Positions 411-51,941 of a stretch of 64,000 nt of DNA are shown here, piece by piece. The stretch covers positions 30,008,001 to 30,072,000 of the forward strand of contig OZ365115.1 in assembly GCA_977030845.1 (NCBI GenBank). Direction: 5' to 3'. A program made the translations under genes and the position numbers. A model generated the notes under the pieces. It was not told where the DNA came from and did no database searches. It saw only the letters and a program-made list of their open reading frames with translations. The stretch's first letter is position 1. Each line of letters begins with the position of its first letter. This DNA comes from Fimbriosthenelais zetlandica (Eukaryota).

Positions 411-32030
<31,620 letters not shown>

Positions 32031-40201: not shown

Positions 40202-43200
40202 GTGAGTTCTTTACATTTTAATTTTGCCTAAGAACTTATTGGGGACTTTTATAAGAAGAAATCCATTTAAGATTATTAAGGAAGTTAATACAATTAATCA
40301 TTTATGTCTGTTGCAATTAAGCCTTTGACTATTGCTTATAGTATTTGGAGGAGGTTGAAGGGTCCCACCAGCTAACAAAGCTAAAATTTAATATACCTTT
40401 AAAATGATTTTCTTGTTTTTTTTTGTTTTCAGAGTAGTACAGATGTATGCTCGTTTCTACTGGATCGTGGCTCTGTTCTCGGGTTGTATTGGTGTTGGCT
40501 GTATACTAATATCAATATTCGCCATTCCAATGCCGTCCTTCCTGGATGAAGGCAGTGATCCAACAGCGGTAATTAAATATTATGGTATATTGGATATCTC
40601 TGCTTTTTACATTAGTTTCTTAGAAGATTAAAACTTTTGTCTGTGACACTAGTCCATTATTTCTGGCAATATATTTTACACTTTTCAGGGCTTTCAAGCA
40701 CGACACACGTATATCAGTTTGAGGCATACAACCTTTCTTGCGTTGCTGGCTTCACCTATGACTGATTTGCCCCAACAGTCGCAGCCTACAGCACTTAAGA
40801 GACGTGCCGTAGTGATTGCAAACCATGATACCAGCTACTCAGCAGCTAATACTAGTAATATTAGTAGTAGTAAGAGTAGTAGACCTACTACTACTACTAC
40901 TACTACTACTTCCACGACTTCTACTACTACTACTAGGCCTAGTAGTAGGCCTACTACTACGACAACTACTTTACATCCACCAGTGGGTAAGTGAACCAGA
41001 ACCTAGATAGCATTACGTATTTTTACAATAAATTCTGTACACTTAAAGGAAGCATATTATTTTCATGATAATTGCTAATATCACCAGTGAATATGTTTGT
41101 CTAAGAGAGATTTTATATCAGTCTTTGTTTGTATAACATAGAGATTGGAAGCCGTCATACAAACTACCCTGGACCAGCCTGTTTAGATCCACAAGTGAGT
41201 AAGTCCGGTAAGTGAACCAGAAACTAGACGGATCTAACATTACATATTTACCATAAATTCTGTAAATCAAAATAGGAGGAAGCATGTTGAGGGGAACATG
41301 ATTCCCTTTGTGAAAATAGCCAGTTTTTAGCCAAACACCAGTGAGGCTGCCCAAGAGAAATTTTATATCACTCTTTTGTTTCAGATATTCGGAATCGTCT
41401 GAAGTTGGTCTTTGAGTCAAATGAACCTGACAGGGACCTCTTCAACCTGCACAGCTTCCAGTCTATTTGTGATATTGAGAATACTTTCATCCGTCCATCG
41501 CTTCCTCGTTCCATTGTGAACTACCCCTGCCCCTACATGATCTCTCTACCCACCATTACTGCAGCATATAGTAGAAAAAACTGCAAAGACATGACTGAAC
41601 AAGATGTAACCAACATGAAAAACCTCCTAGCTGACTGCTACCCTTATTATAAGAAAACACATTCGCTGTTGGGCACACGAGCACCAGCAAAATGTACCAG
41701 CACAGTGAACACAATTTTCTATTATCTCACAGATGTTAACTTCAAACCATCTCATAACGCGAGTACTAAACTAACGTATACCACAATGATCTACAGTTGG
41801 ACTAACACAAGGACGGACTATTTCAAGAGGGTGTTTGAAGGGAAGCATATATCTCATGGATCTGTGAAGCTAGTGTCGGTCTATGGGAATTTAGATGAGA
41901 AATTCGAGCTGTTTGAGGACTATCTGCTTTCAGATTTGGAGTATTACATTGGTGCTTTATCCTGTAGCCTTATTGGAATCGTCATGTTCCTTTACCTTTT
42001 TTCCTTTGTATTGGTAGTGGCCTCCTTTATCAACGTCATTTTCTCATTTGCCACAGCCTATGTATTTTATTACTACGTGTTTGGTATTCATTTCTTCCCG
42101 TTCATTAATCTTCTGGCTGCTCTAATCCTTGTGGCCATTGGAGCTGATGATGTTTTTATTTTCTATGATTCATGGAAGCAAGCAAAGAAGGATGACTCTG
42201 ACGTGCCTTTAGAAAACAGGATTGGGAGAGCTTTCAGCCATGCTGCTGTCTCTATTGCTGTCACCAGCCTTACTACTGCAGCCTCTTTCTTTGCAAATTA
42301 TAATACCAAGATTGTCTCCATCAAGTGCTTTGCCATCTTTGCAGGTTTTGCTGTGCTTGCTAATTTCTTTTACATGCTCACCTGGACTCCGTCCATTATT
42401 GTAGCAATTGAGGTGGTGGAAAAGTCTATGAAATATTTACTCCAGGCCCTTAAACGTGCTTTTCATGTTGTTATTGCCTGTAGGACAAATATTTCTCGGG
42501 TTATATTCAACCAAGCACTGCCTTGGTTAATAGAAAAAGCTTGGTTCATATGGATCCCCCTCTTCTTACTAATCGGTGTTGGTGGCTTTGTCATTGTACT
42601 CTATAAACCTGGATTGCAACTCCCCAAATCCAAAGAATTCCAGCTTTTCAGCTCCAATCAGTTAATGGAACACTGGGATCAAACTACAAAGATGCAGTTT
42701 ATGTTTGAAAGAGACAATGTTGACAGACAGCTTATCGGACTTCATGTGATCTGGGGTGTCTTGCCCCGTGATAATGGTATGTGGTACAATGTAAGCGACA
42801 TAGGAACATTAGTGCCTGACAAAGACTTTGACATGTTTGCCCCAGAATCACAGCAATTCATGGTGGATTTTGTTAACAGCACTCTCTATTCTGACATAGT
42901 GGACGTTTCTGACTATATGAAGAAGAATAAGCTATCCATTTTTGAAGCTATTCAGCTTATGTTATATAATTGCAAAAATCCTCCCGGGAAGGACACTGTC
43001 TTTGATTCTTACAGAAATGAGATTTGTGTTGAAAATGAGACCGAAATACCTTTCTCTAGAGCCTATCTCCAGCAGAACTTTGCTAAGTTAGTTACAGTTG
43101 TCCAGCAATTTGTCGATAAGCAACGAATCATTGGTCAGCCTAAGTTCAATAATGCCAGCCTTGGTTGCTTCATCATATCTATAAGAAGTAATCAATATTT

Positions 43201-45276: not shown

Positions 45277-49304
<4,028 letters not shown>

Positions 49305-49336
49305 TTTATGGATTGAGGAGCCTAGCTGTTAACTTC

Positions 49337-49579
49337 TTATCTCCAAAATAACTTTCCTCCGATGACTTTTAGGGCAGGTTTATTCTTGATGAGGGCCTCT
49401 CGTCCAAACTGTGTGCTACACTGGGGACAGGAGCCTTTGTCTTTGGTGAAATCTTGCACAATTTTATGAAGGTGAATTTTCACAAGTTGTCCACTGCCTC
49501 CCTTGCGATATGTTAGAAGCAGATTTTGGCATGTGCGACAAAAGACGCTTATTGTTCTTGGTCGCAACGGAGGAACCAT
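49337..49579 (-). CDS. Intronless 80-aa putative Zn-ribbon protein (C14xxC17...C51xxC54), MVPPLRPRTISVFCRTCQ...YRKGGSGQLVK...CPQC...KVIGGKLFWR
   Basis: Strong acceptor tttcctttttttctgtag| at 49593; gatATGG start; two CxxC pairs; resembles from memory a bacterial hypothetical family (not verified). Confidence 0.8.
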   Translation of the reverse strand: MVPPLRPRTISVFCRTCQNLLLTYRKGGSGQLVKIHLHKIVQDFTKDKGSCPQCSTQFGREALIKNKPALKVIGGKLFWR

Positions 49580-49799
49580 ATCATATTCGATTCTACAGAA
49601 AAAAAGGAAATAAAAAATATTCTTAGCGGTAGGCCTATAATTGACCTTCTGCTGGCCTTGGAAATTCATCCAGGCATAGGCCTATAAAGGTAGGGCCTAC
49701 CGGTAGGCCTATTCATATTTATTAAATATAGCCTACTCGGTAGGCCTAGCCTGAATCATCATTTGGAATGGCATAATTTCTAAAATATCATACCGTTAC

Positions 49800-50200
49800 C
49801 TATAGTTTATTTACAGTAAGCTTCTCAGTTATCAGAAAACAGTAAATTACGTTTGCGAGGCGGGAACACTCCGAGAAGCGTACAGATCTGCCACCACGTG
49901 TGAAAAGACGGAACTAAAGTGCCAGTCGTTAGTTCACGGTTTTCTCACTAGGTGACAGCGCTGTTTCGGCTCGAGAGCAAGAAGCGAAGAGACCATCGCC
50001 CGTTGGCCTAAATACTACCACAGGAGTGAGTTAACGCAAGGAATGCTTCCGTAATAAGCTTATCCCAATGGAACTAACAAAGATAGTCATCCTTCCACGG
50101 AATAATTTGTGTGTTACATACCCAAAAAGATTGAATTATAGGTGAAAGGCTTCTCACGCTTCTTACAGACAACATGGACGCCGCCATCTTGTTTTATGCT
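49800..50200. promoter_or_regulatory. CpG-rich bidirectional promoter and first-exon region
   Basis: Minus-strand donors at 49799, 49793 and 50166; plus-strand donor GA|gtgagt at 50026; CACGTG E-box (about 49895); CTCF-like tcactaggtgacag (about 49945); YY1-type cgccgccatcttg (50179-50191). Confidence 0.6.
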
Positions 50201-51337: not shown

Positions 51338-51941
51338 GTGAGTTAGCCTAGGCTATTGTGTATTCGATTGTTCAATCAATTAGTAGGGCCTAAGTGAATC
51401 AAATTATACCTGTAATGTTATTGTAGATAGAAGGAAGATTATGTAGCCTTATTTTGAAATTCAGTAGGCCTATATTAATCCAGAAAATCGCACTAAGTAG
51501 GTCCAATGAATTTTAATAGGCCTAGATTTCATTAAGCCTAGATCAGGCTATCTACATTTGCTATCTATAGCCTAGTCCTTATATAATACTAAAGTAGGAC
51601 TACCGATATTCTTTTTAAACAGTCTAAGTAGGCTATATTATGAACAGGAAATATGTGCTCTAATAATCAAAATTTTCTCATTTAATTAATTCTTACAGTC
51701 ACTCTGTTCTTTAATTAATACCTACCATCCCTATTATTATCATATATACACTATAACAGGTACCTCCAGATATGTAGGCCTCGCATATTTAAATGGATTC
51801 ATGACCCAATCTTGAGTCACTAACAATATGGCTGTTTAAAGACTACAACCTCAGCCCATCATTATATATTATATTGTACTCACTCACCCTCTTACAAACT
51901 CCCACCCCTCCCCTCCCGCCCCCCACCCTTTGCCTATCTAG

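What the first reader, a model, noticed from the sequence alone, without database searches (positions are those of the whole stretch)
49337..49579. Intronless bacterial-like Zn-ribbon microprotein, possible horizontal transfer or patchily retained family
Seen: 80 aa, basic, two CxxC pairs 33 residues apart, motifs YRKGGSGQLVK and PALKVIGGK, and no intron although RECQL next to it is intron-dense. From memory (unverified), this matches ~80-aa hypothetical proteins of marine gammaproteobacteria and some protists (pattern C..C....YRKGG.G.LVK...CP.C...F.R...I...PA.K.IGGK). I know no vertebrate or insect counterpart or function. Inference: a bacterial gene domesticated by insertion into the RECQL 5' UTR, borrowing its promoter.
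Basis: partly seen in the sequence, partly recalled or inferred. Interest (0 to 1): 0.75.

Follow-up and report, generated by a model that had tools for sequence, protein, structure and literature searches.

The report
Conserved zinc microprotein ahead of RECQL
The 80-residue reading frame is a real, strongly conserved small zinc-binding protein from an unstudied family shared by marine bacteria, algae, a choanoflagellate and invertebrate animals; in animals it is an old resident gene encoded just upstream of the RECQL helicase, apparently on the same messenger, not a recent bacterial import.

Summary
Window 49337-49579 (minus strand) encodes an 80-aa protein with net charge about +12, two CxxC pairs and both quoted motifs.

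They are 83-aa "Zn-ribbon motif" hypothetical proteins in at least 563 bacterial species (Vibrio, Shewanella and others), and proteins of green algae and other protists. No Pfam, NCBIfam, PDB or Swiss-Prot entry covers the family.

Recent gene transfer is not supported:
- The ten animal-like sequences form one clade (100/97).
- Their nearest named relative is a choanoflagellate.
- Synonymous sites between copies are saturated, with dN/dS about 0.1.
- Base composition matches the RECQL exons.
- One relative has an intron inside the frame.

The frame shares an internal exon with the RECQL start codon, 32 nt upstream of it. Seven other contigs show the same layout, with spacers of 2-75 nt, and two more may. 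One of the seven is an intron-free, cDNA-like contig carrying both reading frames. In one further lineage the downstream gene is CEP44.

Function is unknown. No RNA data could be obtained for this genome.

The parts
49337..49579 (-). Small ORF: 80 codons plus TAA stop. Zinc-binding microprotein with CxxC at residues 14-17 and 51-54.
   Evidence: Homologues. AF2 model with pLDDT 90.
49580..49594 (-). 13-nt exon leader (49580-49592), preceded by the 3' splice-site AG (49593-49594) and a T-rich tract.
   Evidence: Read. An equivalent acceptor lies 2-37 nt upstream of the ORF start in L001, L089, L090, L006, L095, L096, L097 and L099.
49305..49336 (-). 32-nt spacer between the ORF stop codon and the RECQL start codon.
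   Evidence: Spacers in relatives are 2, 4, 7, 18, 19, 54 and 75 nt.
49296..49304 (-). RECQL start codon plus 4 nt (ATGGCTG, 49304-49298), then the donor GT (49297-49296). The intron is phase 1.
   Evidence: The same ATG+4 nt|GT junction occurs in L001, L095, L096, L097 and L099.
49033..49209 (-). Next RECQL coding exon, encoding the N-terminal coiled-coil region.
   Evidence: translation and tblastn match to the RECQL N-termini of L089 and L092.
48733..48909 (-). RECQL exon carrying helicase motif I (GGGKS).
   Evidence: One search gives 69% identity to the L089 exon.
48247..48546 (-). RECQL exon carrying the DEVH box.

Best explanation
The ORF is a genuine protein-coding cistron of an ancient, unnamed family of ~80-residue, very basic, single-zinc, all-beta proteins. 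Two CxxC knuckles pin a small beta-tent-like fold. The most conserved motifs are YxKGGxGxLVK and PAxKxIGGK.

The family occurs patchily in bacteria, mainly marine gammaproteobacteria. It also occurs in algae and other protists, often behind an N-terminal presequence, in a choanoflagellate, and in a set of invertebrate animals.

In animals the gene was inherited vertically and has no promoter of its own. It is the upstream cistron of an internal exon of RECQL. That exon consists of an acceptor, a short leader, the 80-codon ORF, a 2-75 nt spacer, and the RECQL ATG plus 4 nt before the donor. One mature mRNA would therefore carry both proteins.

Shown here: conservation, purifying selection, the fold class, the exon layout, and one cDNA-like contig with both ORFs.

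Inferred: ribosomes translate the microprotein first and reach the RECQL AUG by reinitiation or leaky scanning. The small ORF would thus both make a protein and limit RECQL output. The protein itself probably binds nucleic acid, or another anionic ligand, in the cradle formed by its two conserved motifs. I put nucleic-acid binding at about 40%.
For: Family and conservation:
- 232 representative hits, 43 at E <= 1e-10.
- A profile search found Vibrio, Photobacterium, Shewanella, Idiomarina and Ferrimonas 'Zn-ribbon motif protein' at E ~1e-30, plus Chloropicon and Asterochloris.
- At least 563 bacterial species loci.
- 14 strong matches (E <= 4.4e-28) plus 9 weak ones (E 1e-8 to 1e-6) among 401 evenly sampled genomes of the Vibrio phylum, which shows patchiness.

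Vertical descent in animals:
- In the careful ML tree the 10 animal-like rows form a clade at 100/97.
- That clade sits inside a 91/85 group with the choanoflagellate Helgoeca nana.
- Forcing animals and gammaproteobacteria together costs 33.6 lnL, AU p 0.057.
- dN is 0.18-0.42 with dS saturated; dN/dS is 0.08-0.15 where computable.
- ORF GC is 44.6% and GC3 41%, within the range of the RECQL exons.
- L099 has an intron inside the ORF.

Shared exon with RECQL:
- Window, L001, L089, L095, L096, L097 and L099.
- L092 is intron-free across at least three intron positions. It carries the ORF at 44-289 and 226 aa of RECQL at 365-1042.

Fold:
- The model has pLDDT 90 and seven strands.
Against: - No sequencing run could be listed for this genome. 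The shared transcript is therefore inferred for the window from splice signals and relatives.
- The library type of the run behind L092 could not be checked.
- None of the animal-like contigs carries an organism name. 'Animal' rests on RECQL or CEP44, intron structure and earlier notes.
- The tree has only 80 columns and its backbone is unresolved. The AU test does not quite reject animals plus gammaproteobacteria (p 0.057). The group with the choanoflagellate also holds unlabelled sequences.
- In L098 the same ORF precedes CEP44, not RECQL. In L006, L093, L094 and L091 no RECQL was seen downstream. The link to RECQL is therefore not universal.
- A codon-aware control shows no selection against internal AUGs.
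- The complex prediction gave no answer.
Confidence: 0.72

Rival explanations
1. Recent horizontal transfer: a gene of a marine gammaproteobacterium was inserted into the RECQL 5' UTR of this animal lineage and domesticated there.
For: Bacterial homologues of 41-52% identity exist, with the same length and motifs. The ORF has no intron in the window. No annotated animal homologue was found.
Against: - The animal clade is monophyletic and lies outside the gammaproteobacterial clade.
- The nearest named relative is a choanoflagellate.
- The same exon layout occurs in seven other contigs with saturated dS.
- L099 has an intron in the ORF.
- Composition is like the host exons.
- The closest sequences are eukaryote-like, not bacterial.
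Confidence: 0.03
2. Ancient inter-domain transfer: the family moved once or a few times between bacteria and eukaryotes, in either direction. Examples would be transfer into an early eukaryote or holozoan, or from algae into marine gammaproteobacteria. It was then inherited vertically in animals.
For: - Distribution is patchy in bacteria: 14 strong and 9 weak matches in 401 sampled genomes of one phylum.
- The gammaproteobacterial clade grouped with a green alga and presequence-bearing sequences in the quick tree.
- The mature N-termini of algal proteins resemble the bacterial N-terminus.
Against: That grouping has weak support and dissolves in the careful tree. No root is available. This reading is compatible with the best explanation for the animal part and differs only on the deep origin.
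Confidence: 0.3
3. The ORF and RECQL are adjacent but not truly dicistronic. Separate mRNAs would arise by an internal promoter, by an alternative 3' splice site near the ORF end (the conserved ...TGGAG / TGGAAG before the stop), or by early polyadenylation, so each protein has its own message.
For: An 80-codon upstream ORF with a good start context (purine at -3 in 4 of 5, G at +4 in all) would strongly reduce downstream initiation. About one out-of-frame AUG lies in each ORF. AG dinucleotides lie near the ORF end in several lineages.
Against: L092 carries both ORFs on one intron-free contig, and L098 likewise with CEP44. With spacers of 2-7 nt in L095, L096 and L099, an internal promoter or acceptor would have to lie inside the ORF.
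Confidence: 0.2
4. The frame is only a regulatory upstream ORF. Its translation matters for RECQL control, but its peptide has no function of its own.
For: Its position in the 5' leader of RECQL.
Against: Homologues are free-standing genes in hundreds of bacteria and in protists. The fold prediction is confident. Selection is at the protein level with dS saturated. The same protein occurs upstream of a different gene in L098.
Confidence: 0.03

Closest known systems
83-aa 'Zn-ribbon motif protein' / hypothetical proteins of Vibrio, Photobacterium, Shewanella, Idiomarina, Ferrimonas and Alteromonadaceae (UniRef/NCBI labels; no Pfam or NCBIfam model)
   Same: Same family by sequence: 41-52% identity over about 73 residues, profile E ~1e-30. 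Length, both CxxC pairs, and the YxKGGxGxLVK and PAxKxIGGK motifs are shared.
   Different: The bacterial genes are free-standing with no conserved neighbourhood across genera. They keep a conserved MAKPNKKGP N-terminus and internal Met residues. The animal copy is an upstream cistron inside RECQL and forms a separate clade. None has a known function.
Beta-tent fold domains (Lupas et al. 2015, PMC4287342): Yippee/YPEL, Mis18, cereblon CULT, RIG-I/MDA5/LGP2/DRH C-terminal domains, MsrB, Mss4, GFA
Animal dicistronic genes with a conserved upstream protein, e.g. Drosophila mei-217/mei-218 (PMC6778797); from my own knowledge also SNURF-SNRPN and MIEF1 microprotein
   Same: Two conserved proteins are encoded in series on one mRNA. 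The upstream one is small. In mei-217/218 the downstream partner is also a genome-maintenance factor.
   Different: Here the upstream protein has bacterial and protist homologues and predates the arrangement. The pairing with RECQL was not found in the searched literature. In one lineage the partner is CEP44.
Small zinc-ribbon ribosomal proteins (eS27, eL43, bL33), which IMG auto-annotation assigns to some members
   Different: Matches cover only about 45-55 residues and fall below the beta-tent hits. All NCBIfam and Pfam scores are far below cut-off.

Membership tests
Unnamed ~80-aa 'Zn-ribbon motif protein' family (bacteria, protists, animals) | Significant full-length sequence similarity to the bacterial and protist members. 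| tested here: met
   phmmer gave 43 representatives at E <= 1e-10. Profile hits to named Vibrio, Shewanella and Chloropicon proteins at E ~1e-30, 41-52% identity, 88-91% coverage.
Unnamed ~80-aa 'Zn-ribbon motif protein' family (bacteria, protists, animals) | Two CxxC pairs about 33-37 residues apart, plus Y-x-K-G-G-x-G-x-L-V-K and P-A-x-K-x-I-G-G-K. | tested here: met
   Alignments A1-A3. Invariant or nearly invariant positions: C14, C17, L21, Y24, K26, G30, L32, K34, C51, C54, R60, K71.
Beta-tent (Mss4-like) fold | Two antiparallel beta-meanders at roughly a right angle, pinned by a zinc ion at the apex through two CxxC motifs (PMC4287342). | tested here: inconclusive
Beta-tent (Mss4-like) fold | Hairpin insertion between beta2 and beta3 that forms the ligand cradle with the C-terminal sheet. 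| tested here: inconclusive
   Short strands at residues 34-36 and 40-43 follow beta2 (20-26) and carry the most conserved motif. The spatial arrangement was not verified.
Pfam Yippee-Mis18, CULT, MsrB (SelR) or GFA families | HMM score above the family's gathering threshold. | tested here: not met
   No such hit for the window protein. Among 63 family members, only one sub-threshold GFA hit at E 4e-4.
Classical zinc-ribbon Pfam/NCBIfam families (Zn_ribbon_4, Zn_ribbon_RPB9, TFIIB ribbon, DUF1610, S27e) | HMM score above the curated cut-off. | tested here: not met
   The best score is 17 bits against cut-offs of 25-30. Bacterial members score 12-18 bits against cut-offs of 36-80.
Recently horizontally transferred bacterial gene in an animal genome | Nests inside a bacterial clade, is absent from related eukaryotes, and has foreign composition. 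| tested here: not met
   The animal clade (100/97) lies outside the gammaproteobacterial clade and groups with a choanoflagellate. AU p for animals plus gammaproteobacteria is 0.057. Composition is host-like. Seven other contigs share the exon layout.
Dicistronic eukaryotic mRNA | Both complete ORFs lie on one mature, spliced transcript. | tested here: inconclusive
   This is met in a relative: L092 is intron-free with the ORF plus 226 aa of RECQL, but its library type is unknown. For the window itself only splice signals are available, and no RNA run was listed.
Dicistronic eukaryotic mRNA | The downstream cistron is translated from that mRNA by reinitiation, leaky scanning or an IRES. | not testable with these tools
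   Only indirect data: spacers of 2-75 nt and no AUG depletion beyond what the protein sequence imposes.

The most novel reading that the evidence does not exclude
The microprotein is a detached, RIG-I-CTD-like beta-tent module. It would recognise a nucleic-acid end or structure and work in trans with the RECQL helicase. The two would be made from one mRNA so that their ratio is fixed. This would be an ancient helicase-plus-sensor pair that vertebrates and insects lost and that genome annotation has missed.
Probability: 0.08. Interest if true: 0.85.

Novelty: new variant of a known kind. Interest (0 to 1): 0.62.

Why it matters
A protein kept at 55-76% identity across animal lineages whose synonymous sites are saturated, and shared with bacteria and algae, has no name, no domain model, no structure and no paper that I could find. 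In animals it was not seen in any annotated source. This is probably because gene predictors do not call a second protein in a 5' leader.

Its fixed position directly in front of the RECQL start codon means two things. RECQL translation in these animals must pass through, or around, an 80-codon ORF. And a genome-maintenance helicase is co-expressed with an unknown zinc protein. Both points are directly testable.

The finding also supplies a clean case for separating 'bacterial-like' from 'horizontally transferred'.

Tried and rejected
- RNA evidence: the look-up of sequencing runs failed once and then listed no run, for 2.3 kb and for the exon alone. Read laying could therefore not be used.
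- Binding to RECQL: complex prediction with the L092 microprotein against the first 226 residues of L092 RECQL scored 0.00, 'no answer'. This is not evidence either way. Full-length RECQL could not be submitted because it is spliced.
- Bacterial gene neighbourhood: Vibrio has an SgrR-like regulator upstream, and CutA1, DUF2238 or a TonB receptor nearby. Shewanella has penicillin amidase and LysR. Nothing is conserved across genera, so there is no functional clue.
- AUG depletion as a sign of leaky scanning: mononucleotide shuffles suggested depletion, 8 observed against about 23 expected. A synonymous-codon control removed it, 9 against 9.8. I rejected it as evidence. Only the lack of internal Met in 8 of 9 RECQL-linked copies remains.
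- Family and structure searches found nothing above threshold: Pfam, NCBIfam, PDB sequence and Swiss-Prot structure searches. The C2H2 zinc-finger hits are repeat-summed motif matches, not homology.
- Literature: nothing on 'Zn-ribbon motif protein', or on RECQL with bicistronic or dicistronic.
- The search for related loci with the broad alignment A2 failed for lack of a conserved stretch, so it was redone with A3. One genome search had a wrong 'of' argument and was corrected.
- CEP44 was not found downstream of the ORF in any locus other than L098.
- The species or phylum of the window and of the related contigs could not be determined. The closest unlabelled outgroups could not be named.

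Full report
**1. The observation**

On the minus strand, 49579-49337 is an ATG-to-TAA frame of 80 codons.
- The protein has Cys14/Cys17 and Cys51/Cys54.
- It carries the two quoted motifs at residues 24-34 and 68-76.
- It has 15 Lys/Arg against 3 Asp/Glu.
- The longer mechanical ORF (110 aa, from 49669) is not the gene. A T-rich tract and AG at 49593-49594 mark a 3' splice site 13 nt before the ATG, and the orthologues share the MVPP start.
- The gene is single-copy in its 447-Mb genome.

**2. The family**

- No Pfam or NCBIfam model reaches its threshold for the window protein or for 63 relatives.
- A word-indexed search found seven close relatives at 55-76% identity.
- An exhaustive phmmer of 1.84 billion representatives found 232 hits at E <= 1e-3.
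- A profile of 63 members retrieved dozens of 83-aa 'Zn-ribbon motif protein' or hypothetical proteins. These come from Vibrio parahaemolyticus, Photobacterium, Shewanella, Idiomarina, Ferrimonas, Alteromonadaceae and others, at 41-52% identity to the window protein. The green alga Chloropicon primus also appeared.
- EukProt entries place further members in Asterochloris (green alga) and Helgoeca nana (choanoflagellate).
- Many unlabelled members have 25-120-residue N-terminal extensions rich in Arg, Ala and Ser. These are followed by a sequence that resembles the bacterial N-terminus, as expected of organelle-targeted protist proteins. This last point is inference.
- A scan of one genome per bacterial species found at least 563 loci.
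- An even sample of 401 genomes of the Vibrio phylum had 14 strong and 9 weak matches, so the family is patchy in bacteria too.

**3. The fold**

- AlphaFold2 on the 63-row alignment gives pLDDT 90, pTM 0.72 and seven strands.
- Foldseek finds family members in AlphaFold DB at E down to 8e-9. Beyond them it finds only weak hits to Mis18, Yippee, FAM72, E3D and cereblon.
[quoted passage not shown] The scores are nonetheless in the range where the tool warns of mere common arrangement.
- I therefore call the protein beta-tent-like, not a member of any named beta-tent family.
- No Swiss-Prot model and no PDB sequence is a credible relative.

**4. The genomic setting**

- Thirty-two nucleotides after the stop codon lies ATGGCTG followed by GTAGGT (49304-49292).
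- Joined to the next exon (49209-49033), this reads M-A-D-P-W-A-E-L..., the coiled-coil N-terminus of RECQL.
- Helicase motif I and DEVH exons follow.
- The downstream protein of the orthologous contig L092 matches human helicase Q1 best, E 3.5e-71 against 6e-46 for BLM.
- One internal exon (49592-49298) thus holds a complete ORF and the RECQL start codon.

The same architecture is seen in seven other contigs:

| Locus | Spacer | Junction or note |
|---|---|---|
| L001 | 18 nt | ATGGCAG\|GTAAGT |
| L096 | 7 nt | ATGGCAG\|GTAAGT |
| L095 | 2 nt | ATGACCG\|GTGAGT; coiled-coil and motif-I exons on the same 921-bp contig |
| L097 | 19 nt | ATGTCAG\|GTAGGA |
| L099 | 4 nt | ATGGCAG\|GTGAGT; the small ORF itself is split by an intron between its two halves |
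| L089 | 54 nt | No intron after the RECQL ATG |
| L092 | 75 nt | See below |

- L092 is intron-free across at least three positions that are split in the genomic contigs. It carries the ORF and then 226 residues of RECQL open to the contig end, so it looks like an assembled mRNA.
- L090 and L006 show compatible but unverified junctions.
- In L098, an intron-free contig, a 68%-identical copy is followed after 32 nt by a 389-aa CEP44 ORF (Pfam E 9e-41).
- L093, L094 and L091 show no downstream partner in the short sequence available.

**5. Transfer or inheritance**

- Pairwise dN among the animal-like ORFs is 0.18-0.42. dS is saturated in most pairs, and dN/dS is 0.08-0.15 where it can be computed. 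The copies are therefore very old and under protein-level constraint.
- In a careful ML tree (92 rows, 80 columns) the ten animal-like rows form a clade at 100/97.
- That clade lies in a 91/85 group with the choanoflagellate and six unlabelled sequences. The gammaproteobacteria form their own clade (96/90) elsewhere on an unresolved backbone.
- Forcing animals and gammaproteobacteria together costs 33.6 log-likelihood units, AU p 0.057. This is suggestive, not decisive.
- The ORF's GC (44.6%) and GC3 (41%) fall within the values of the RECQL exons.
- Together with the L099 intron, this excludes a recent insertion of a bacterial gene. It favours an old holozoan gene that many lineages lost or that annotation missed.
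- The deep origin, including any ancient exchange between bacteria and eukaryotes, is unresolved. In the quick tree the gammaproteobacteria grouped with a green alga, but not robustly.

**6. How it may work**

Shown: the exon layout and the co-linear cDNA-like contig.

Inferred: one mRNA yields both proteins.
- The small ORF has a purine at -3 in four of five lineages and G at +4 in all five, as does the RECQL ATG. Most ribosomes should therefore translate the microprotein.
- Spacers of 2-7 nt in three lineages suggest termination-reinitiation. Spacers of 54-75 nt in others fit ordinary reinitiation or leaky scanning.
- An apparent lack of internal AUGs disappears under a synonymous-codon control.
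- An alternative acceptor or an internal start that would give a RECQL-only message cannot be excluded.

On biochemical function:
- The charge, the zinc-pinned beta fold and the concentration of invariant residues in two motifs point to a ligand cradle. The motifs follow beta2 and sit in the C-terminal strands. Nucleic acid is the most likely ligand.
- Bacterial neighbourhoods give no clue.
- The complex prediction with the RECQL N-terminal part gave no answer.
- The CEP44 case argues that the habit of riding in a 5' leader may matter more than RECQL as such.

**7. Novelty**

- No paper was found on the family or on a bi- or dicistronic RECQL.
I verified that independently here.
- Dicistronic animal genes and beta-tent domains are known kinds. 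This family, its hidden presence in animals, and its pairing with RECQL were not found described.

**8. Limits**

- There is no RNA data for this genome.
- No organism names are available for any animal-like contig.
- The alignment is short.
- The structural scores are modest.

Noticed in passing
L098:56-283 and 316-1485: In another, unlabelled lineage a 68%-identical copy of the microprotein ORF is followed after 32 nt by a complete 389-aa CEP44 ORF (Pfam PF15007, E 9e-41) on one intron-free contig. The same small protein is thus the upstream cistron of a different gene.
   Followed up: partly
L099:1866-2223: Here the microprotein ORF is split by an intron of about 120 nt between its two CxxC halves (after ...TTQ). 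It is still followed 4 nt later by ATGGCAG|GT and the RECQL exons.
   Followed up: yes
window 49630-49748 (also 31030-31769, 40934-40953, 51465-51524): The palindrome TAGGCCTA occurs 15 times in the window against 0.9 expected. Four copies lie within 120 nt of the intron just upstream of the ORF exon. It is probably a short dispersed repeat or MITE-like element.
   Followed up: partly
window 50180-50190 (minus strand): On the RECQL strand this reads AAGATGGCGGC, a YY1-type core-promoter motif (from my own knowledge). It lies about 600 nt upstream of the ORF exon and is a candidate region for the shared transcription start and non-coding exon 1. No RNA data were available to check it.
   Followed up: no
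L001:13318-15584: The intron after the DEVH exon of RECQL holds a tandem array of roughly 50 units. Each unit still translates like the last 10-13 codons of that exon (...SQWGHDFRP), so the minisatellite seems to have been seeded from the exon end.
   Followed up: no
L009-L088 (Vibrio loci), e.g. L009:2293-4008: In most Vibrio species the bacterial homologue lies on chromosome 2, directly after and slightly overlapping an SgrR-like regulator gene (SgrR_N plus SBP_bac_5) on the same strand. This is not conserved in Shewanella.
   Followed up: partly
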